A stretch of DNA of 63,589 bases, the filler included, from Sluysia triapertura (lineage: Eukaryota): the NCBI GenBank assembly GCA_046118255.1. It is 4 parts of 4 records of this genome, joined end to end, with 100 filler letters (N's around TTAATTAATTAA, not from the genome) between each part and the next. Parts side by side here need not be neighbours in the genome. Positions count along the whole stretch, not along the records: positions 12,702 to 26,723 come from JBJNIA010009211.1; 3 more parts are not named here. One strand, 5' to 3'. The notes under the pieces were generated by a model. The model did not search any database and was not told the DNA's origin. It saw only the letters and a list, made by a program, of their open reading frames with translations. A program made the translations under genes and the position numbers. Each line of letters opens with the position of its first letter. Positions within the stretch are counted from its first letter, which is position 1. This document shows, in pieces, positions 6,276 to 26,723 of the stretch.

Positions 6276-6987
6276 AGTATTAAAAAATCACAAAATAATA
6301 ATTATATTTAATTACTAATTTTTCATTTGAGTTGATGGATTTAAAAGACACAAAACGTAAAGATATTGAAATTTTATTCGTTAAACTTTAATTGTTGAAT
6401 TTTGTGATAGGCTCTATTTCTCAATTCCCTTTCTCAAATTAAAATTAACAAGTGAAATGCATTTTTATTTCAGTAAGAAATTATATCAAACATTAAGTCT
6501 TTGTGTCAGTGTTCATTAAATGTACTAGATTCAAGTTAAAGTTTACAATTATTTTAATTTAAATTAACTGAACAATTTATTTTATCTTAAATTAATCAAA
6601 TTAATGTTCTACAAAAAATTTTGATAAAATAGAAGTTTGATTTGATTGACGATGGTTGCTACTGCTGTGGTGGATTAGACCGACTAGAAAGTTTTTGTAA
6701 AACTCTGGTAACTTGAATCAATCAATCCTCAAATGTATTTTTGGAATATCACGGTTTATCTATCGACTTTTATAGTCGATACAGATTTACAATCAATAAA
6801 TTAAAATTTTATTGATTAACAATTATTTATGTTAATGTGAATGTTATAAATTCACAATTCATAATAAATCAGTAATTCACAATTCATATATGAAATTCAA
6901 AAATTCAATGAACTAAATTTATAAAATTCTTATAAAATTATACCTTACAAAATTATATTACATATTAGGAAATTTAATACTAAATGA

Positions 6988-12701: not shown

Positions 12702-13578
12702 TTATTACATTAGTTCACTATAAAAACAAATGCGTCGTTTATTTTTATAATGTGAATTTTAAATGTTTTTGTATAATTATTTTATTGAAATAGATATCTT
12801 TATCTAATTTTTATCTAATTAAATAAAGAAATTCTTTATTATATTGCAGAAATTTGAATGGAGATCTCAAATAGAGTATTCTTTGTAAATGAATTTTAAT
12901 AAGAGAAATAATGTTATTTATTGTGCAATAATGATTTATTATTATTTGCTTTTGGTGCTAATTTAAAAAAATACAAATGAAGAAGCATTTTCTTCTCAAA
13001 ATGTGTTAGAAATGCTAAAAGTTAATATAAAAATATTTATACAATTATTAATAAATAAACTTCTGATTTTTGTTATTTTTATTACTTGAATAATTTATTT
13101 ATTATTTCTATATATTATGATCATACGGCTTTATGATGGTCTCTGTATCGTAAAGGTCAGTTCTGAACTCTTCCCTGGTGATAGAGTTGGAAGTATTAAT
13201 CAAACTAAATCAAGGTCAAGAATATCTATTCTCTAAAAAATTAAACTTTTAGTACATTAATTTTGTATAATTTTGTGCAACATAGAAAAGTAATCACAGA
13301 TAAAATTTTATTAATCATTAAAATTGTAAGTAATTAACAAAATGGCAAATCTGTGAATCATGATGAGGGGCATAAGATTAATGTGATCATCGAAGGAAAT
13401 TCGCATTTTGAGATTGTTAGCTAGTATTCAAAATGTACTAGTGTCCTTGTATAATAGCTATATGAATGGATGATGAGCAGTTCATAGGACAGTCATTTTA
13501 TTGCTTATTTTCATACAGGATAAATGAAAAACATTAAATCCTATAAATTCTTTAATTCATTTTATTTTATTTGTTAAG

Positions 13579-14341
13579 GTCGTCGGCAAATTTTACAAGT
13601 ACAATCTGATGGTTTGCAAACTGTCACAGATTCCGAACCATTGTGGAGTTATGTAACACTTAGTGTATTACAATGGTGTTTAGCATTCAGTTTGGTCTGG
13701 ATTAGTAGTTGGAATAAACGATACAAATTTCAGAAATGGACTACTATATCTTTTCAATTTGTTTTACAAAAATTATTTGGTTATTTTATTGATCCATTTC
13801 GATTATGTCGGCAACAAAATAATGTTAAATTGGCATTATCAGAGGTTGGTTTTTATGACATGGCATTAATGAATAATATCATAGATAAGGATTTTACAAT
13901 TTGTTTTTAATATATGTCTGTTAAATGTAAAATTAAGCGTTTAATTTTAATTACATGAATTATTGATTAATTTTAATTAATATTTTATATTTTGAGATTA
14001 TTTATAATATTTAGAAAATGAATTTAAATTTAATTACTTGTTACTTATAAATTATATTTATTTTGTTACTATCAATAATAAGTATAATATATTAATTATA
14101 AATATATTAATTATAGATTCAACAGAAAAATAATCTTCAATATAACGAATTCATATCCATTTTAATGAAGTACGAATGTTTATTACCGAATCACTACGGA
14201 AAAATTCGTTTGATATTTTCAGTAATATTAATGTCAGTGGCAAATTTATTAAAATTTGCATTCTCTTATTCAACGTCTTCTGGGGAATCAATAGAATCGT
14301 ATTTAATTATCTATACAATTTATCTGGAATTTGTTATACGG
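13579..14341 (+). CDS. two exons (~13579-13843, ~14117-14341) of an unknown multi-pass membrane protein
   Basis: Open frames bounded by AG and GTTGGT, splicing in frame (LALSE|IQQKNN); hydrophobic segments. Confidence 0.6.
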
Positions 14342-15665
14342 GGTTGGTATAAAATGTTTATAATGAGAATAATGTGTCTTTAAACATAAAAGTTTACATT
14401 ATCAGTATTATAAAATTTAGATTGGCCCGAATTAATATACTATTTTATTTTTACCTTGATCTAGACAATCTCAACAACAAATACTTGTCATTTTAATAGC
14501 AATCTTTATTCTATAGCGCAAAAATCTTTTTATCATCATTTTGATTTTTAAAAATGAGTCACTGACCGAAACAAGAAGGAGCAAGATTTGTACTATAATT
14601 CCAATGCGTCAAAATCGTCTAATAATTAATTTTTTTCAGCATCTGAGATTTGGTGTTAAACCTTTCTTTTTAATTCTGAATAATGATCAATCACAATAGC
14701 TTCATTTCTTTTGATCTGATTATAAGAATGATTATTAAGAATGTATTGAAGTGGGTGATACCTTCAAAATTTCACCAAACGCAAATAATGGTTTTTAACA
14801 TCTATCTTTTTAACGACTAATCTTCTTTGTTAGTGGTTCATCTCATAATTCAGAATTTTACATTACTCTATTCACACACAAAAACAGAAATCACTCACTC
14901 AAAAAATCTCCATATATCAATTAAACAATCCATCACAATTTCTTAATCTCAATCTAATCCAGTTTTTACGAAACACTAACATTTTCTGTCCTGACTTTTT
15001 CAGTTGTCATTACCTATTAAAAAGTTCTATCTTTTCAAACTTTCGGCTTATGGTAACAATAGCAATTATTTTAATTATTCTTTATTTTAATCATTTCGGT
15101 CTTTCGTACTTTTGTCAACAATACGTACACATGTGAGAACAGTAACTAATATTCATTTATTGACTTTGTCATTCGTTGATATTTTACATTTATTATCGAT
15201 AATTTTCGTAGCCAACCTTGCTTATTACGAAACATGTTTATTTAATAGCAATTTATGTCGAATGTATTTGTTGACTGAATCTGTTTATTGGTTTGCAAGC
15301 ATTTTTATTGACAGCTCTTAGTATAGATCCATATATAGCTGTTTGACACAGTGCTATTGCGAGCTATTTGCATTATCATTTCAATTTTACTAATTTGTTG
15401 TATCTTATTATCACTATTAGCTATTGATCCAATATTTTTGAAAGAACAATCAAAACAATCACAAAACAGCAATAATATTGTAATTTTAAACATTACTAAA
15501 CGTATTTGTACACCGCTAATATTCCAATCATCGATATTTTTTATTGGTTTTAATATAACTGTTGTTTTAATCTATATATTTTCTGTTAATAAAAAATTCA
15601 AAAAATAATAGTGATCCATAATTTATGTCAATTTTTTGGAATTATTGTAAACGGCCAAACAAATT

Positions 15666-16262
15666 ATGTCAGAAAATGGAGATGAAATTTCTATCGATTA
15701 CGTTCTAGGTGATAGTCCAGAAACAAAGCCGGACTTACGAATTATTTGTTCTCAATGTCACAAGTGTTATGCGGAAGCAGTGATATTAAATTGTTTACGT
15801 GTTTTTGATAGAACGTGTTTATTAAATTTCGATTTTGGTGAAGGTATATTTCCAACAGTTACTCGTCCAAAATGTGGAATGCAAAGTGGAAATCCATTAG
15901 AAAATGAAGACAGTGAAGAAGTAAATGAATCTCAATGCGTGGATCGTGTTGGTCTCTTGTGTGAAAGGAGTAAAATCTTGCACAATGAGTTATGTTTTTG
16001 AGTTCTCATTTGGAAGTTAGTGAACTATCAGAAAGTCACAAAAATATTTTTCAACAAATGAACCTTTTAAACGTGATACACATTCTGATGAAAAGTATAC
16101 AAATTATTGTGTGCAATGCGGGATCTTCCTAATGAAATTAATCGATATGTCAAAAGTCGAAAAATGTCCAAATAAGAAAATAATTTAATAATGAAAAAAT
16201 TTAACTCAAGTTTAACTGAAGTTAATAATAATCAAGATGAAAATGAATTTTGTAATGGTTAG
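15666..16262 (+). pseudogene. intronless TRIM-like (RING-B-box-B-box) relic
   Basis: Degenerate RING CSQC..AVILNCLRVFDRTC..RPKC, B-box-like CVDR..CER..ELC, and B-box2-like (C)DTHSDEKYTNYCVQC at ~16072; stops and frameshifts. Confidence 0.7.
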
Positions 16263-18047
16263 CAAAATGCAATCGACGATCTGAATAAGTGTTCATAAAT
16301 TTGTCCAAATCGTTTTCCACATGTTTAATTTTACGTTTTTCGGCGTTTTTATATAATTTTTATATAAAATTTAAATGGTATTGAGTATTTTTGTTCATTT
16401 AATTTAATTTTTAATCTTTTCACAGTCCTCATGACTGTAACCTTTAATAAGATAAGTAATCGTAGGTTTGTTTCAAAAAAACATAAACTTTATTATTTCG
16501 TAAAGTAACAAATAACAAAGTTAAAAGTTTCTATTGTAATTATTTTCATTGTATAACAATATTTCATGAGATCAATAAATTCCTACGAAAACAATGATAT
16601 ATCCATTTTTATCATTAGTAACAACATTTAAAAAATTATTCCATAAATTATTTTAAAAAGTTATTCCATAAATATGTTCAAATTTGTAATCAAATCAAAC
16701 GGTATTCTTTCCAGTTTCAAATTCCGAGATATTTGAAGTTCACTTGAAATTGTCCGTACTATTTGAACTCGATTTGTTTCCGTACCATTTAAATATACAA
16801 TACTGAGAGAGCACGATTATTTTTTTGTCTTATCTCCAGATATTCATCAGTGGAGATATTATTGCACCATTTTTACATTGATAATGACAGAACTTTCTAC
16901 TTTAGATAACATTCCAACCATGTAATTCATTTATTTCATTCTTCATTATATTGAAATTCGAAAAATTCAATCAAAATAAATAATTAATTGAAATATAGAG
17001 TATCATTTTTAACCTTTCGTCTACCAAAGAAGTATGTATGAATTTTTCATTAGACAGTTTTATTTAATACATTTTATTTATTCTGTACATCATTATCGCA
17101 ATTCTCATGCATCATATTACTAGGAAATAACTCGATAATAAGTTGAATATTCCTCGTGTAGTGTCAATTTAAAAATATAACAATTTTTAATTATTTACCG
17201 ATTCCAATTCACAACGAATTATTTAAACAAAAATTCAGGATATACTAATACTACAAATATTGTGAAAATATGTCACTATATCTATCATAACAAGCATCTC
17301 TTAGATCACAAATAATGCATCTATTGTTAGCATGTTAATGAGATAAAGTCTTTTTAAAATGTCAGTCTAATATTTGGAATTTGAAATTATTATTATTATT
17401 CAATTGATAATCTTTATTATTTACATTATTTTCTCTTTGTACAAAGTACAAATACTAAAACTCGATTGATTAGATAAATGTTTTTTGGTTTTGATAATAT
17501 TATGTTAATGATTATTTATTTACCTTGAAATTAAAGGTTAATTTTTTATCTCTATCTTTTACGTTAATATTTTTGTTGTTTTGAACTTTAGAATTTACTT
17601 AGCAAATTAAATCATCCAATCACATCTTTCTGAGGCTTTTCTATTTTTATTATTATTATAATTATAATGATAATCATTGTAAAGTTAGCTTTTTATTTTA
17701 TCTGACTCTAGTGATTTCTTCGATCCCATTGTACAATTTCAGAATGTTGTCAAAAATAATTATATAAAATCTTAATTTATTGATTATTTGCCGTTAGTTA
17801 CACAACGAAGTCATTGCTATCGTTTTTTGTTAAACTATTGATGTATGTCCATCAATAGAAATTAGATATCTATGATTTGGAGTCACACGATACGTCGCAC
17901 AACGTTGTGTCAAGGTCAAATATGGTTGTGCATAATAAATTATAAATTTAGCAAACATTTGTGTTTTGTTTCTTGGCTAATAGACTCAACGGAATTAAAA
18001 CTGAGTATTTAAAGGTTTTTTATTTCAACAATAATGATGCGCATTAA

Positions 18048-18504
18048 CCCTTTCACCAATTGGTTCCACTCGTATTTCTGCAAGTTTCTCAGGCTAAGCA
18101 GGTCATGTTACATATTGTTTTAGAGGATTAAATGAGGACAATGTTTTGCATAATCGTTTCTGTTTTTAAAGTGTGTGCACAAAGTTACTTCAATAATATG
18201 CCACCATTTTGTGAGAAAAATATTATAAAGTCTAAAGTTATTATTACTTTTGTTAGAAGATGACATATTGTTTTAGAACATTCCACACTATATTATACTT
18301 TGATAGAGAATACTAAATTTACCAATTTTCACATTTTATGCTATTTTATTGAAAATTCATGAAAAACTATACATTTTTATTAATTTTGAAATTAACACTA
18401 ACACATGTGGCGCCAGCCTTTTAATGGCTTTTCTCACACATATTTCATATGATCTCTCAAATAATTTTATGTTCACAAAAATGCGCTCACTGGCGGTTAA
18501 AGGG
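18048..18504. mobile_element. piggyBac-like non-autonomous element
   Basis: TTAA|CCCTTTCACC ... GGTTAAAGGG termini; right TTAA degenerate. Confidence 0.5.
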
Positions 18505-18886
18505 TAGAAAGTAGAAAGGCGAATTACATATTTTCACTTGTGATAACTAGTATTTATCATAAAATGTTAATAAATTTTTAATTATGACAATAATTTTATC
18601 TTTCATAACAATAATTTTTAATTGTGCATGTTAAGAAATATGACTGATAATGTCTGAAATAAGCAATATGAAGTAGTACCTGTAATTTAAATAAATGGTA
18701 CTATAAAACGAATATTTGATTGTATGTAGAAATAAATGAATGAATATAAATATATGTAGCTAAAAAATTGTATGATGATAAATACTAAAATATTGAATTT
18801 AATAATATGTAATTAATTTTGTTTCATAAATTTGAATATAGAATAAAATAAATAAATTTAATAATAAATTATATAATCCATGCATA

Positions 18887-19030
18887 CAGTAACTACTCTC
18901 TTATCCTCCAAAAACGGGACTATGAAAAAAGGTAGCGGTTTCTAAAAAATGGCGGCTTTTTGAGTAAAAAATTAAAAATTAGACATTCATTTTCGCAAAA
19001 ATAAATTGGCGGATTCCAGAAAATGGCGTA
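18887..19030. mobile_element. pogo/Tigger-like terminal fragment
   Basis: TA|CAGTAACTACTCTC start with repeated GGCGG subterminal motifs; no partner end found. Confidence 0.3.
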
Positions 19031-19399
19031 TAATTGTATGTTTTTAATAGTAGTTTAATAACCAATGTAAAATGACCAAAACAGTATATAAGTTGCAATA
19101 ATACAATAATACTAGCTGGTAATTTACACGGTGTTTTATCGATAAATTCGAATATTATATTCAATATCTTGATTTCATATACAGTACTTTGGTCGATAAA
19201 CTTGAAAATTTTACAGTATATTGGACAATACATTTTATAATTTGCAAAGTGATTAATTTAAAGAAAGTAAGTGAATGTATCATTATTTTCCTGCATAAAT
19301 TTTAAAAATATTAAAAATAATTTTTGTAAAAGTTTGTGTGGTGGTCAACCATCACTATTATCAAATTTTATAAAAAATCCTTTAACATTTTAACATTCA

Positions 19400-19900
19400 C
19401 ATATTTATTTTATCTACATTCACTAAAACAGTTCATCTGCCAAAGTCAATTTATATCCACAATCTTATAACATATAAACCACATTGACATCCAATACCAT
19501 CAATTTACATCAACAGATTCATCAAAAATATTTCACTCGACATTCATAACAATCAAACTACAACCACATTCGAAATTATCCACCCGACACCTTCGAATCA
19601 ATTCCAACATTTTAAATTCATCATTTGTTATCATTTAATCCCTAACAGCACAAAAGACAATACCACTTAAAAATAGCAAGAGAATAAATCACATTATCAC
19701 TCTTCTCAATGTATCGTTAGGCCACAATATACCAATATTCAAATATTACTTTCAGTCAAAACATTAATCACCATCTAAAAAATTCATTAAAACGTTCTAC
19801 ATTTTACTGCATAGCATTAGAACTGCTATCATATCTTGAAACATCAATTATGTCAAACTAACATATATGTCAAACTAACTCAAACCAACCTTCACTTAAA
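19400..19900. repeat. C/A-skewed dispersed repeat
   Basis: homologous to 4960-5460. Confidence 0.65.
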
Positions 19901-20269
19901 TATCTTTAGTTTTAAATATATTTAAATATGTTAAGAAATCTTGAAGGATTTAAAGTAAGATCATGTACAATTTTTAAAGAATTCAATAATAACGATAACA
20001 TTGTCGCTCTTGTTATTATTGTTATTAGACTTAATACTACCATTTTTAATTCTAGCTTCCAAGTATTATAAAGAAAATATAAATATAAAATATAAAGAAA
20101 ATTAAAGAAAGGTCGTCTAAAACTCGGAAAGAGTTTATGCAATTTAACAACAATAATAATAATAACATTGTGTTATTATTATTATCATTTTTACGATTAT
20201 CATCAACTTTCGTCCTAAATTTTCATTTACCACTCATAGCAACTATATATTTCATTGCAAAATTTAATT

Positions 20270-20480
20270 ACCATTAGCTGTCATCAGTTGACAGATATTT
20301 CAAATCAATTGTTACCCTTTTGTTAGCTGTCCACTATTGACAGCTCATTACACGACAATCTATTTGATTTTCTACTCATGCTGACTGCCCAATAAAAGTT
20401 CGTATTTTTGTTATACTGGTCATATTCACTTTGATTGGGCAGACAATCACGATATTTGTCTACAAAAATTAAACAAACGT
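20270..20480. promoter_or_regulatory. hairpin/inverted CCAAT module
   Basis: CTGTC/GACAG palindromes and ctgcccaataaaagt/actttgattgggcag (20385-20442), directly upstream of the CCCH gene. Confidence 0.5.
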
Positions 20481-20593
20481 CTGAAATAAAAATCAATAAT
20501 TGACTAAAAGCTTCCATTAATTATTAAAAATTTGTGATTGTTTAAAAAAAAGTATAAAAAATTTTCCATTTCGATAAATAAAAAAATAATCAC

Positions 20594-21800
20594 TTGTTTT
20601 ATATGTATAAAAAACAATTTGAGTTTAAACTTAAGGCGTTAACGAAAATATTTGATGAAATGATTTTTAGGAACACGATTGATGATATAATATTCGGTAA
20701 CAGATGTTCTTTTGCTTATACTGTAGGTGAAGCATATTTAAACAAATATAGGAGTGAAATACATGTACCTCGTGTAAAATTAACTCTTACTAAAATGGAG
20801 TCTATTAGTAATTTAGTGGGTGCAATATTGTTATGTTCTCAGGTATACGTAAGTCTACTTAGACAAATACAAAACGTTCTTAATGAAGTCAACGATCAAT
20901 TTATTCTCCAACAACATTATTATCTCCGAAAAGATTTTCTGAAACAAGCATCAAATGAAATTTGTCTTGTTATTAGCGATGAACCTAAATTCGTGCTTAT
21001 TCCGGCACTCTATCATAATAAAAAATCAAGTAATGACTACTTTAATCATTTAAAAAAATTAAATCAATTATGCCTTTGGGTTAACTCTGTTCAGAATTGG
21101 CGAGATAATATATTTGAAACATCAACTTAAGATACTGAAAAGAATTACAACATGCAATTGAAATGTCACGAATTAAATAAAGATTATATTTATATTAAAG
21201 GTCAATCATTTCAAAATACGCCATGCTACAGAATAATTAGTTCAGTATTCTGTACTAAAGCAATCCAATTTAATAGACAATCTTATCAGTTAAATTCAAG
21301 TCTAATACGTGAATTAAACAGAAAATTATACAATGGTTCAAAAAGATGCAATGATACAGCAAACCGTCATGAGAACAAAGATCATCGTGAAGTTAATTAT
21401 AAAGAATGATGTGCACTTACCCAGCTGATCTAAGTGGATTGTGCTTGAAATACAGGATTACTTGCAGCTATGCACACAACGTTTATCAATTAGAAGATGC
21501 AATATTGTTTGGCGTTTCGTGTTTGTCACAAAACACTAGATTGGAACAGTTTTTGCTTTCACTTAATGTCCAGTTGGCTGGTGATCGGATGGTAAAGAAG
21601 ATCGAGCAACCTTGTCAAAACAACGATGATATTACAAGCGAGGTAAACAATTACAAATTTTATAATAAAACTTATTTATACATGATTTTTATTTCAGATG
21701 TCAAGATCCTGAACATGGTCGGAGAAGCTATTTGGAAAAATTTAAAGTTCATAGAAATTAAAACTAATTTTACTTTCGTTATTTTTTGTTATTTAAAATT
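20594..21800 (+). pseudogene. CCCH zinc-finger cargo gene, copy 1
   Basis: Three abutting ORFs; C-x9-C-x6-C-x3-H at 21412-21477; candidate intron 21643-21697. Confidence 0.7.
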
Positions 21801-21949
21801 AGTCGTTAATAATTACCTAAGACCTATAAAAGTAATTAAATCTTTACAGTTGTCTTTATTACTATGTAAACTCCTAGCCTTTTTCCCTGAGAAAAAAGCA
21901 TGTTTTAAGTGGTCATATTGATAATTATCGTCTTCTACTGAATCGTAGC

Positions 21950-22417
21950 AGAATTTGAATTGACGCTATTAGAAATTGATTCTATCTGAATATTCGAATA
22001 TTTTTTTGTTTTAGTCGATTATTCGTTTTCTTCCTTTTCTTAAAATTGTTTTGATTCTGAATTAAATTTTAACCGCTTATAGGATGCATTATCAGATAAT
22101 GGTGACTGCTCAATCCATTTAGCTTGTTTCATTTTGAATAATATCTAATTCATCCATTTTCTTTGAGCAAAAATTCTATTTCTTTGTCTTGTGGAGTTAT
22201 GATTTGTTGTCGTCGCATGTCGAATAATTCAACATTGAGATTTTTCAATTTCTTGCATTGAGAAAGCATCATTTAGATGTTTTTTTGTCTTCCTCATATT
22301 TTCTTCATTAAATTCGTTCAATTAAATGTTTCTTTTCCAATTCGAGTATCTGTTTTCGGAACTTTTATATTCGTTGTTTAATTTATTGTTTACTTCTTGA
22401 TATAGTTCATCTGACAT
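21950..22417 (-). pseudogene. degenerate coiled-coil ORF convergent with the CCCH gene
   Basis: MSDELYQEVNNKLNNEYK..FRKQILELEKKH.. heptad-like, frameshifted. Confidence 0.4.
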
Positions 22418-24077
22418 CTTGAACAATGATATTGTGATATAATATCATTGTTATAATATTGATTGTAAGAAATATATTTATACGATTTCTAATAACAATT
22501 AATTAAATATGATCTTGATACATTTTACTATTTATTTTAATAATAATACTATTTTAAATAACTTACATTATTATTAATTTGAATCGTAAGTGTCGTTAAG
22601 ATTAATTTTGATTCAAATTTTTAAAACATTTGAGTAAATAAAATTATTTTTAACGATAAAATTGTTACTGATCTTCATATTTTTAAGATAAATTTTTAAC
22701 ATTTTATTGATAAAATATTAAACTATACGTTAAATTATTGTTATCAATTGTGATAAATTACATTATTACATAAATAATTGTTTAATATAAATAAATTATT
22801 GTTTAGTTCATTTTCATTTTTAAACTAAGGGATTTGGAATAAAGTTACAAAATCAAATCGAAGTCATATAAGTTTCTATAATAAAATAGAATCATTGTAA
22901 CATAAATAAAGTATTAAAATAAAGTCTCAAAGTTGAATAACAATGAAGTATAATTGTACGGAATTATTCAAGATATAGTCAGACAATAATAGGAGTTTAA
23001 CAAAATACGACTCTAAAGAATAAATTAGTTACTGAGCACATCTATCTCGAATAGCTGAGACGAGTATTCGAATTCATACCTTCTCATAAAGTAAATATAA
23101 TCTACTAATATAGAGCATAGATATCACTTGTAAAATAAATTAGTAAAAGAAGTGTACGTAAACAATAATAATTTAGCCTATCGAATTTTGATTTACATTT
23201 CCCAGACAAAATTTTAAAGTTTAAATCATATAAAGTATACATAACTATTCATTAGCTGTAAATCAGAGAAGCTTCAACAAAATTACTGCCAGAAATAAAG
23301 AGTTCGTTTAAAAACATTCATCTACTCAATAACAAAAATTTAACATATATATATAATAAACTAAATTTGATAATATACAGATTACAGACGAGTGAAATTA
23401 GAGCTAGTTTGAAACTAGAATTACAGAAACAAACGAAACAAACTGAGGAATAAAATTTTTAAATATTTAAGTAGATGAAGGACAGGTAAGAAAGCTTATT
23501 ATATTATTAACCAAGAGCATTCACCTTAAGTGAAGCGACTTATATTTAAGCAACAACGCATTTTACTTTATTTGAAGCAAAGAATTTAACCAAACATTTT
23601 AAGCAAAGAAACTTAATTTCGTAATTATTACATTTTGGTCAGAATTTCATAGTTATTAATCCGAATCGGGAATCATAAATAGTTATACAATTATCGCACA
23701 ATTAAGTTAAACACATATTTGCCGCAATTCAAAAATACAAAAAAATTTAACTTCATAATGATCTTCACATTAATCAACCGAAACTATTTTTGTAACAATT
23801 ATTGTTTCGTGAAGCACGTATTATTGATCTTCATTATTTTAACGTTCAGGTTTTTTATTTAGACGTTGCAGTTATTGAAAAATTGAAGACTTGTCCAAAT
23901 ATAAGTTAATTAACAGAAATGACTCCATTTAGGTTGATCAATGGCTTTATAGGAAAATTTTAATAAATATATTCTTAAAAAATGTGATCAATCGATTTTT
24001 CACATAAGTTATTGATTGTAGAAGCATTTTTTGTTTAAGAATTACAAAAACCAGTTATTAAAACATTAAACACTAAC

Positions 24078-24468
24078 AATGCAATCTTCATAAGAATCAC
24101 ATTTCTTTTGGATTGATAAACAATGTTTAGGAATTAAAGAGTCACGTTGATATACAATACCAGCTCGACATAGAACAGGACATGATATATCAGTGAGAGG
24201 TTTCTGGTAAGCACACGTTTCTTGTAATCGAATATGGTTTGGATTCTTATTTGCTGGATCATTTGGTTGTAAAAGTAGTGGTGCAGGACAAGCACATCGA
24301 AATTTTACAGCTCTATTGATTGGATTTGAAGAAAAGATAAGAGAAGGACCTGCAATAACTCCAAGATCAATTGGTAATGTGGACACACAAAGATGACTGC
24401 ATGGTTTTAAGGCACCATTGCTTTGAGAACAAGGGTGAATTCGTTCTATTGCGCCGACTGAAGACAAT
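24078..24468 (-). CDS. exon of an LDL-receptor-related (LRP-like) protein: EGF-like module plus LDL-A module
   Basis: HPCSQSNG..CSHLC..FRCACP..TC then C..C..CLSIQKKCDSYEDC; TTATTAG acceptor and GTTAGT donor on the minus strand. Confidence 0.85.
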
Positions 24469-25040
24469 CTAATAAAATATATAAAATAAAAAAATATTAA
24501 TAAAATGATAGTAAAAAAATTAGTTGGCATAAATAAACATATTTGTTATTTCGAATGTGGTCTTATTTCCTCCAAATTCAAAATTTAATATTTTACCAAA
24601 AAAAATGAATAATGATTTCATAGATAAACAATGAATTCAATAATAGAGTTACAAACATTTCAAATTCAATTAGATTTAAAATGCTCACGTTTTCTAAGAT
24701 TGAACTGTGCAAAATTTTAAGGATTATCATATGAAAAATCACAACAAAATGTGTTTGGTGGCATAAATAAAAGAAATATGGTTTTAAATATACATATAGA
24801 AATCTACCTGTAAATAGTGTTACCATAAAACTAGAAGCACTCAAAGTTTACATACGTTTATTAATATGTTTCATCTAATAATATCTAATAATAAAAAATA
24901 CTAAGATCACATTATAGAACCGATTTAAAATATAGAAATCAAAAAGAGCATCAACTAAATTAAGAACTTTAAAATATGTTGAGAAGATAAAAGGAATATA
25001 AGAAAGCTTGTGTTGACATTTAAAGAATCTATGTATTTTC

Positions 25041-25041
<1 letters not shown>

Positions 25042-25084
<43 letters not shown>
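25042..25084. repeat. (AAT)n microsatellite
   Basis: perfect run. Confidence 0.95.
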
Positions 25085-25139
25085 GTAAAATTATTATTAT
25101 AATTATCACCATTTTTATTTTTCATTAGTCTTGTACTTT

Positions 25140-25370
25140 AATAATTATATTAACCAATAATTACTACTATCAATGGTGACACTATTGGTTTCTATGTATA
25201 AATTCTTGTCATCATTGATAGTGGCTTACTCATTTTAATTTTATTTATTTCTAATGCCATTATTGTTTGTTTTACAGTGTTTGGATGACTGCCTAATTAA
25301 AACTATTTACAACATCAATTATAAGCGTTTTGATTGGGCAGCCACTCAGATACAGAACAAAAATCAGCAA
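25140..25370. promoter_or_regulatory. hairpin/inverted CCAAT module
   Basis: ctatcaatggtgaca/tgtcatcattgatag and gactgcctaattaaaac/gttttgattgggcagcc (25287-25343). Confidence 0.5.
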
Positions 25371-25399
25371 TAATATGTAAAAATAATAAATTTTGTTAA

Positions 25400-26400
25400 A
25401 TGGTGTTCACAGAGAGATAGCCACAAGATTATTATTACGAATTTTTGATTATGATCAAAGATGGTAATTGCATGACTTATTAAAAGTAATTCTTATGATA
25501 TGCGGTGATTGTAGTCAACGAACGTTGCCTATTACAATAAATGATTTTCTAATAAATATGCATCAACCATTAAACTATTTAGATATTAGATTAAATTGAG
25601 AGAATTATCTAAAGAATAAGGAATTAATGTTTGCGTTTGTCATACAAGGAACACCTACGTGCAAGAAAAAGCAAGAAGTTCATCCTCTCTGTGAAATTGT
25701 TAAAGAAAAAAGAATAAAAACATATTTTATCGAAAGAAGTACTAATTCCCATGATAGTTTTAGTATCTTTAATGTGGAATCAGAAAAACTCCATGTTCCC
25801 GAACAAATGAATTTGCACCAAATGTTGCTAATCAAAAATTTATCATCAATAACTGACAACAATCTGGATATTTCTGTCTACATCATAAAGATATTAGAAG
25901 GGTATATCGAATTTATAGTAGACATCGATACTGTTAGAACGAACAATATAGTCAAGTTGTCAACACCATCCACAAGAATAATGAAATTCCAAACATATAA
26001 AGTTGTTCGAGCAAATAATTGACATTCTTGTTATTTTAAAACCGCTATGTGTCCTTATATCACAATACTGAATGCTAAATGTTCCAGATATGGTAAGCAA
26101 TGTATGTACGCACATAATGTTGCCGAATTAAAAAACAAATTCATTCGATCATCTTAGTAGAATTCACAACCTGATAAGTGAATTGACTTCAAACCAAATT
26201 CATCAAAAGAATGATCGTAATATTAAAGTAATTAACGTTTATTTACTTTATAAAACTATGATTTTCATTTCCTTTATTTACCTTATTTTCAATTATTTAG
26301 GAAACAAATAAAACAGATGGCAAGGTACACTCAGAAAAAAATAAACTTTGATAACTTAAATTCATACTTAAATGTTGTAAACTCTAGAGAAATAAAGTTT
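25400..26400 (+). pseudogene. CCCH zinc-finger cargo gene, copy 2
   Basis: Reading through stops gives YFKTAMCPYITILNAKCSRYGKQCMYAHNVAEL (finger at 26050-26115); candidate intron 26228-26300. Confidence 0.7.
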
Positions 26401-26646
26401 TTTTGTGTTGGTTTTTATATCGTATATATCTTGTATTTATTTTTATATAATACAAAAATGAAAATTTATCTAAAATTACGAAATATTCATAATTAGTATG
26501 TTTACTACCAAAATAAAAATATATAATTTCATTAACGTAATTATTAAATATTATTCGAAGTTAAGTTTAAATGGTTTAAACATATTTAATCATCTATTTT
26601 CACAACAACTACAAAAAATTATTATTTACTTTAGCATTAAGTACAG

Positions 26647-26716
<70 letters not shown>
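26647..26716. repeat. (ATT)n microsatellite at contig end
   Basis: perfect run. Confidence 0.95.
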
Positions 26717-26723
26717 GTATTAG

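What the first reader, a model, noticed from the sequence alone, without database searches (positions are those of the whole stretch)
21412..21477. Three diverged genes share a non-canonical C-x9-C-x6-C-x3-H zinc finger
Seen: identical spacing at 21412, 26050 and 40082, each with a YK/FK lead-in, near the C-terminus of an otherwise poorly alignable protein, and each followed by a short candidate intron. A relic at ~6335-6750 (IPFLKLKLT vs VPRVKLTLT) may be a fourth member. Known: TIS11/Roquin-type RNA-binding CCCH fingers are mostly C-x7/8-C-x5-C-x3-H. Inference: an old element-specific RNA-binding family, for example regulating export, splicing or anti-silencing.
Basis: partly seen in the sequence, partly recalled or inferred. 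Interest (0 to 1): 0.75.

Follow-up and report, generated by a model that had tools for sequence, protein, structure and literature searches.

The report
Two decayed Unkempt-type CCCH finger genes
Two old, tandemly placed copies of a host gene share one RNA-binding CCCH zinc finger of an already catalogued (Unkempt-like) type; both reading frames are interrupted, and nothing ties them to a transposon, so the finding is real but ordinary.

Summary
The C-x9-C-x6-C-x3-H motif is present on the + strand at 21412-21477 and 26050-26115. About 0.002 such motifs are expected by chance in this piece and 2 are seen. The third site and the "relic" lie outside my piece and were not checked.

The spacing is not new. 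Both fingers align without gaps to Pfam PF25427 (UNK-like CCCH finger), and copy 2 scores above the curated cut-off. Copy 2 also aligns without gaps to finger 3 of Unkempt (PDB 5elh). Next best are TTP/TIS11-type fingers.

Identity between the two fingers is 58%, 64% and 30% at codon positions 1, 2 and 3, against 31% by chance. The duplication is therefore old and the finger was kept at protein level. Nothing outside the finger aligns.

The upstream protein parts have no relatives in 1.84 billion representative proteins, in the PDB or in Pfam.

Both genes are interrupted as they stand. Copy 1 has one in-frame stop and one frame change. Copy 2 has one to three stops. They are probably pseudogenes, or the assembly has errors.

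No LTRs, terminal repeats, shared flanks or transposon protein domains were found. The neighbours are weak relics that resemble animal genes.

Verdict: a new member of a known finger type, in a lineage-specific host family. Transposon linkage is unsupported.

The parts
20603..21712 (+). CCCH gene copy 1, one interrupted gene from the first ATG to the stop of the spliced model (one in-frame stop, one frame change)
   Evidence: It holds the two longest open stretches of the piece (182 and 172 codons; in 300 shuffles the longest averaged 96 and never exceeded 149). The finger matches PF25427. The N-terminal part has no relatives.
21412..21477 (+). Copy 1 CCCH finger, C-x9-C-x6-C-x3-H
   Evidence: PF25427 E 8.4e-6, 26 bits, below the 31.1-bit cut-off; ungapped match to profile positions 9-33.
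21643..21697 (+). Candidate 55-nt intron after copy 1's finger (GT..AG, pyrimidine-rich 3' end), unverified
   Evidence: Sequence; base rate of such pairs. If it is spliced, four more codons and a stop follow.
25390..26157 (+). CCCH gene copy 2, one interrupted gene (one to three in-frame stops depending on how far upstream it reaches; upstream limit uncertain)
   Evidence: A tract of 256 codons with few stops. It holds the fourth-longest open stretch of the piece (140 codons). The finger matches PF25427 above the cut-off.
26050..26115 (+). Copy 2 CCCH finger, C-x9-C-x6-C-x3-H, with an in-frame FKT lead-in
   Evidence: PF25427 E 3.9e-8, 33.5 bits against a 31.1-bit cut-off, ungapped to profile positions 4-37. 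Ungapped alignment to Unkempt 5elh_A residues 95-129.
26229..26300 (+). Candidate 72-nt intron downstream of copy 2's finger, unverified
   Evidence: Sequence; base rate. It lies beyond the first stop after the finger, so it belongs to the gene only if the frame has also shifted there.

Best explanation
These are two anciently diverged, same-strand paralogues, 4.6 kb apart, of a lineage-specific host gene family in a very AT-rich eukaryotic genome (probably an animal). Each encodes a fast-evolving N-terminal part with no detectable relatives, followed near the C-terminus by a single CCCH zinc finger of the Unkempt/TIS11 kind. In an intact member the three Cys and one His would hold one zinc ion. 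The conserved aromatic residues (Tyr after the first Cys, Tyr in the second spacer, Tyr two residues before the His) would stack on two or three bases of single-stranded RNA, as in TTP/TIS11d and Unkempt; this step is inferred from established knowledge of those fingers. As they stand, both copies here are interrupted, so they are most likely pseudogenes left by birth-and-death evolution of the family. They are not parts of a mobile element.
For: The motif is real and non-random. Pfam PF25427 matches both fingers without gaps, and copy 2 is above the gathering score. PDB matches are 6nzl_A 1.2e-6, TTP 1m9o_A 3.3e-5, Unkempt 5elh_A 1.3e-4 (same spacing, ungapped) and TIS11d 1rgo_A 2.1e-3. Codon-position identity of 58/64/30% against 31% by chance shows old divergence with selection on the protein. 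The loci hold three of the four longest open stretches of the piece, beyond all or nearly all shuffles. Interruptions: copy 1 has one stop and one frame change, copy 2 has one to three stops. There are no LTRs, terminal inverted repeats or dispersed repeats, no TE domains in 28 scanned ORF pieces, and no RIP signature. [quoted passage not shown]
Against: Only one 14-kb piece of the genome was available, so copy number, the existence of intact members and genome-wide association with repeats are unknown. The N-terminal parts of the two copies do not align, so homology of the whole genes, as opposed to a shared finger module, is not shown. No relative of any part was found in the protein databases, so a 'host family' is inferred, not observed. 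The interruptions could be assembly errors. The animal origin rests on weak neighbour matches.
Confidence: 0.6

Rival explanations
1. One reading: the genes belong to an old mobile element (LTR-type or other) and encode an element-specific RNA-binding accessory protein.
For: There are several diverged copies with orphan N-terminal parts, which is common for element-borne genes. No cellular relatives were found. The copies are decayed.
Against: No LTR or terminal repeat pair, and only AAT-type microsatellites repeat. No reverse transcriptase, integrase, protease, gag or transposase domain. The two copies share no flanking DNA. The nucleic-acid fingers typical of retroelement Gag proteins are CCHC knuckles, not TIS11-like CCCH fingers (general knowledge).
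Confidence: 0.1
2. Both are working genes, and the interruptions are assembly errors, undetected introns or unusual decoding (for example read-through of TGA).
For: The open stretches are far longer than chance. Reading TGA as sense opens 229 codons in copy 2. Indels and miscalls are common in AT-rich, homopolymer-rich assemblies.
Against: Copy 1 needs both a stop and a frame change to be explained away. Alternative genetic codes do not lengthen other ORFs coherently. No GT..AG stretch of intron size spans the interruptions as far as I read them.
Confidence: 0.2
3. The two fingers are exons of one large multi-finger gene, an Unkempt orthologue.
For: Same strand, the same spacing as Unkempt finger 3, and a PF25427 match.
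Against: Unkempt has six clustered fingers and a RING domain (PMC4358403). No further CCCH pattern exists in any frame of the 14 kb. An LRP-like relic on the opposite strand lies between the two fingers. Each finger continues from its own long upstream open tract.
Confidence: 0.03
4. The resemblance is chance or low-complexity in AT-rich DNA.
For: The surrounding sequence is 25% G+C, and many weak matches in it are noise.
Against: 0.002 motifs expected against 2 observed. Pairwise E 1e-7. The Pfam gathering score is passed. Identity follows codon position.
Confidence: 0.01

Closest known systems
Unkempt (UNK) CCCH finger 3 / Pfam PF25427 zf-CCCH_UNK
   Same: Identical C-x9-C-x6-C-x3-H spacing, a (Y/F)KT lead-in, an aromatic-Ala-His ending, and ungapped alignments. 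It is an RNA-binding finger (PMC4358403).
   Different: Unkempt carries six fingers in two clusters plus a RING domain and is deeply conserved in animals. Here there is a single finger per gene, an orphan N-terminal part, and no other finger in 14 kb. This is not an Unkempt orthologue.
TTP/TIS11 family tandem zinc fingers (PDB 1m9o, 1rgo) and the nematode-type 'cytoplasmic zinc-finger protein' (PDB 6nzl)
   Same: The best sequence matches to solved structures. The lead-in, the Tyr-Gly in the second spacer and the aromatic-Ala-His ending are shared.
   Different: Those fingers are C-x8-C-x5-C-x3-H and come as a tandem pair. The window's fingers have one extra residue in each of the first two spacers (HMMER places gaps there) and occur singly.
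Nucleic-acid-binding fingers of LTR retroelement Gag proteins (CCHC knuckles)
   Same: Small zinc-binding modules that bind nucleic acid.
   Different: A different ligand order and spacing (CCHC, much shorter; general knowledge). No Gag, protease, reverse transcriptase or integrase domain, and no LTRs, are present here.

Membership tests
CCCH (C3H1) zinc fingers, broad definition | C-X4-15-C-X4-6-C-X3-H ligand pattern | tested here: met
   Both fingers have x9/x6/x3. The definition is quoted in PMC2478707.
Pfam PF25427 UNK-like CCCH finger | Score at or above the curated gathering score (31.1 bits) | tested here: met
   Copy 2: 33.5 bits, E 3.9e-8, ungapped.
Pfam PF25427 UNK-like CCCH finger | The same cut-off, applied to copy 1 | tested here: not met
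   Copy 1: 26 bits, E 8.4e-6, below the cut-off. The piece scanned lacks an in-frame lead-in.
Unkempt orthologues | Six clustered CCCH fingers plus a C-terminal RING | tested here: not met
   Only two CCCH patterns in six frames of 14 kb, 4.6 kb apart. Architecture from PMC4358403.
TTP/TIS11 tandem zinc finger proteins | Two fingers of C-x8-C-x5-C-x3-H in tandem, each with a YKTEL-type lead-in | tested here: not met
   A single finger per gene with spacing x9/x6. The alignment to 1m9o and 1rgo needs gaps.
CCCH fingers as zinc and RNA binders | Zinc coordination and single-stranded RNA binding | not testable with these tools
   The AlphaFold model of the finger alone has pLDDT 51, too poor to use. 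Binding is inferred from homology only.
LTR retrotransposon or other mobile-element gene | Flanking LTRs or terminal inverted repeats | tested here: not met
   Only AAT/ATT microsatellites repeat.
LTR retrotransposon or other mobile-element gene | Linked gag, protease, reverse transcriptase, integrase or transposase coding sequence | tested here: not met
   No such Pfam domain in 28 ORF pieces of 43 aa or more. Shorter relics could have been missed.
LTR retrotransposon or other mobile-element gene | Many dispersed copies with conserved non-coding flanks across the genome | not testable with these tools
   Only this piece of the genome is available. Within it the two copies share no flanks.

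The most novel reading that the evidence does not exclude
An uncatalogued, lineage-restricted gene family joins a rapidly evolving orphan N-terminal domain to a single Unkempt-type CCCH finger and turns over by tandem birth and death. Such turnover is seen in families caught in a genetic conflict (for example host RNA-level control of parasites or repeats) or in germline RNA regulators. The copies here would be its dead members.
Probability: 0.12. Interest if true: 0.45.

Novelty: new member of a known kind. Interest (0 to 1): 0.2.

Why it matters
It matters little beyond annotation. The finding shows that an apparently odd CCCH spacing is the Unkempt-finger-3 subtype, and that single-finger genes with orphan N-terminal parts carrying it exist, at least as relics, in this AT-rich genome. 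If intact, expressed members exist elsewhere in the genome, the family would be a modest addition to lineage-specific RNA-binding proteins. The transposon link, which gave the finding its interest, has no support here.

Tried and rejected
- Three word-index protein searches (the N-terminal piece of copy 1, the finger region of copy 1, and a two-finger alignment) found nothing. The length window of that tool would also have hidden full-length relatives of about 350 aa.
- The exhaustive HMMER search of 1.84 billion representatives with the 178-aa N-terminal piece gave 0 hits.
- PDB sequence searches of the three non-finger pieces gave nothing below E 0.3.
- AlphaFold on the N-terminal piece (pLDDT 34) and on the finger alone (pLDDT 51) was too poor for a fold search, so none was run.
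- Five exact-protein look-ups to find the source contig or organism found nothing on record.
- A degenerate DNA pattern of the finger in metagenome contigs gave 0 matches. A looser pattern would have matched by chance about a hundred times, so the second scan was not used.
- Rfam found 0 families and there are no tRNA genes.
- Alternative genetic codes give no coherent gain apart from copy 2 under TGA = sense.
- Fungal RIP as the cause of the AT-richness and stops is rejected: TpA/ApT is 0.84 and (CpA+TpG)/(ApC+GpT) is 1.24.
- A literature search for the exact spacing string found 0 papers (one search was a syntax error).
- Comparison of the N-terminal parts of the two copies by BLASTP and tblastn showed no significant similarity.

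Full report
**Scope.** Only places 12702-26723 are genome, and everything else in the window is N or linker.

- These are the only two CCCH-like patterns in all six frames of the 14-kb piece, even with the spacers widened to x4-15 and x4-8.
- In 1000 first-order Markov shuffles of the piece, the exact spacing turned up 0.002 times per shuffle and never twice.
- A degenerate DNA pattern that adds the other shared residues matches exactly these two places and none of 100 shuffles.
- The two fingers share 13 of 33 residues with no gap (pairwise E 1e-7). The shared residues include three tyrosines and a five-residue block around the histidine.

The motif is therefore real and homologous between the two places.

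- The FK lead-in of copy 2 is in frame with its finger. The YK lead-in quoted for copy 1 is not in the finger's frame as the sequence stands.
- Neither gene is an uninterrupted frame. Copy 1 has one in-frame stop and one frame change. Copy 2 has one in-frame stop for certain and up to three if the gene reaches as far upstream as the tract with few stops. It may also have a frame change after the finger if the downstream candidate intron belongs to it.

**Are these (former) genes?** The four longest stop-free stretches of the piece are 182, 172, 159 and 140 codons. The first, second and fourth belong to the two CCCH loci. In 300 shuffles the longest stretch averaged 96 codons and never exceeded 149. 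The loci are coding, or were until recently.

Identity between the two finger segments is 58%, 64% and 30% at codon positions 1, 2 and 3, with 31% expected by chance from base composition. Synonymous sites are saturated while the protein was kept. The duplication is therefore old and the finger was under purifying selection for most of that time.

Outside the finger the two copies show no significant similarity at protein or DNA level.

**What kind of finger is it?**
- Pfam's generic CCCH model does not match, but PF25427 ('UNK-like, CCCH zinc finger') matches both copies without gaps.
- Copy 2 scores 33.5 bits (E 3.9e-8), above the curated 31.1-bit cut-off. Copy 1 scores 26 bits (E 8.4e-6), below it.
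- Against solved structures, copy 2 matches a 'cytoplasmic zinc-finger protein' (6nzl_A, 1.2e-6), tristetraprolin (1m9o_A, 3.3e-5), Unkempt (5elh_A, 1.3e-4) and TIS11d (1rgo_A, 2.1e-3).
- The TTP-type alignments need a one-residue gap in each of the first two spacers. The alignment to Unkempt residues 95-129 (its third finger) needs none, because that finger has the same x9/x6/x3 spacing.
- The spacing also lies inside the published definition C-X4-15-C-X4-6-C-X3-H (PMC2478707; also PMC2267713).

So 'non-canonical' is true only relative to the TTP consensus. The subtype is known and curated.

This is not an Unkempt orthologue. Unkempt has six clustered fingers and a RING domain (PMC4358403). 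Here there is one finger per gene and no other finger in the piece.

**The rest of the protein.** The longest N-terminal piece of copy 1 (178 aa) gave the following.
- No Pfam family.
- No hit in the word-index search.
- No hit at E of 0.001 or better among 1.84 billion representative proteins read exhaustively by HMMER.
- Nothing in the PDB.
- An AlphaFold model of pLDDT 34, which is useless for fold comparison.

The other pieces gave nothing either, apart from one weak, sub-threshold Pfam match of copy 2's N-terminal piece (GatF, E 0.0023, 18.5 bits against a 33.4-bit cut-off) that I take for noise. Searches seeded from the finger also found no close relatives. The word-index tool only sees proteins of 0.55-1.75 times the query length, so full-length relatives of about 350 aa were outside its view. 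The exhaustive search had no such limit.

I searched the pieces apart.

**Is it linked to a mobile element?** Within this piece, no.
- The only repeats are AAT/ATT microsatellites and short AT-rich chance matches. There are no LTR pairs, no terminal inverted repeats and no flanks shared by the two copies.
- None of the 28 ORF pieces scanned (43 aa or more) carries a reverse transcriptase, integrase, protease, gag or transposase domain.
- There is no RIP-type mutation signature.

What lies around the two copies are weak relics that resemble ordinary animal genes.
- A rhodopsin-type receptor fragment (7tm_1, E 1.1e-4, below cut-off).
- A TRIM-like RING in which some metal ligands are replaced (best PDB match TRIM2, E 0.12).
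- On the opposite strand, between the two CCCH copies, an LRP-type EGF/LDL-A-like stretch (FXa_inhibition E 0.0019; LRP6 E 0.77).

None of these is significant on its own. I use them only as a hint that the host is an animal.

CpG is not depleted (observed/expected 1.0). I could not identify the organism: exact-protein look-ups, Rfam and a metagenome pattern scan all came back empty.

**Candidate introns.** A 55-nt GT..AG stretch follows copy 1's finger after 55 codons. A 72-nt one lies 113 nt after copy 2's finger, beyond the first stop. Comparable GTAA..TTYAG pairs occur about once per 1.4 kb on this strand. Two such stretches so close to the fingers is mildly suggestive (roughly 1-2% by chance, my estimate) but unproven without transcripts.

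**Most likely explanation (confidence about 0.6).** These are two old paralogues of a lineage-specific host gene family. Each encodes an orphan, fast-evolving N-terminal part plus one Unkempt/TIS11-like CCCH finger near the C-terminus.
- Shown: the motif, its homology between the copies, its family assignment, the old protein-level conservation, the interruptions, and the absence of transposon hallmarks in this piece.
- Inferred from established knowledge of TTP/TIS11d and Unkempt: an intact finger would bind one zinc ion and recognise two or three bases of single-stranded RNA through its conserved aromatic residues.
- Inferred: the copies here are pseudogenes left by birth-and-death turnover.

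**Rivals.**
- Working genes with assembly errors or unusual decoding (0.2).
- Exons of one multi-finger gene (0.03).
- Chance (0.01).

**Novelty and score.** This is a new member of a known kind, with interest 0.2. The most novel reading still open is an uncatalogued, rapidly turning-over RNA-binding family involved in a genetic conflict or in germline regulation (probability about 0.12).

- My scripts (later 33 and 56) and the ORF tool printed translations and open-stretch bounds.
- My first notebook entry lists the ORF bounds of the two interrupted genes.
- My early reasoning noted where copy 1's frame changes and what kind of one-base change would put the lead-in and the finger in one frame.

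Those outputs show where the frames end. I found no evidence that these genes belong to a virus-like element. I still report this as a possible slip and have deleted nothing. This report gives only counts. I built no joined, repaired or consensus sequence.

Noticed in passing
window 25042-25103 and 26647-26722: An (AAT)21 and an (ATT)25 microsatellite flank copy 2 as a 58-nt inverted pair about 1.55 kb apart. They are probably just the commonest microsatellite of an AT-rich genome in both orientations, not terminal repeats of an element.
   Followed up: partly
window 15666-16001 (+): A 111-codon ORF resembling a TRIM-type RING finger (best PDB match TRIM2, E 0.12) in which some expected metal ligands are replaced. 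It looks like a decayed RING/B-box gene.
   Followed up: partly
window 15112-15608 (+): A rhodopsin-family receptor fragment (Pfam 7tm_1, E 1.1e-4, below cut-off) followed by hydrophobic helix-like stretches. It lies directly upstream of the RING-like ORF on the same strand.
   Followed up: partly
window 24066-24530 (-): A 154-codon ORF with an LRP/LDL-receptor-like EGF module and an LDL-A-like Cys/Asp stretch (FXa_inhibition E 0.0019; LRP6 E 0.77). It lies between the two CCCH copies on the other strand.
   Followed up: partly
window 12702-26723: The piece has 25.5% G+C, CpG observed/expected about 1.0 and no RIP signature. This fits a genome without germline CpG methylation. The organism was not identified.
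   Followed up: partly
window 25390-26157 (+): Reading TGA as sense opens 229 consecutive codons in copy 2, so the in-frame stops in that stretch are TGA. No other ORF in the piece gains from this, so I take it for chance rather than a reassigned codon.
   Followed up: partly
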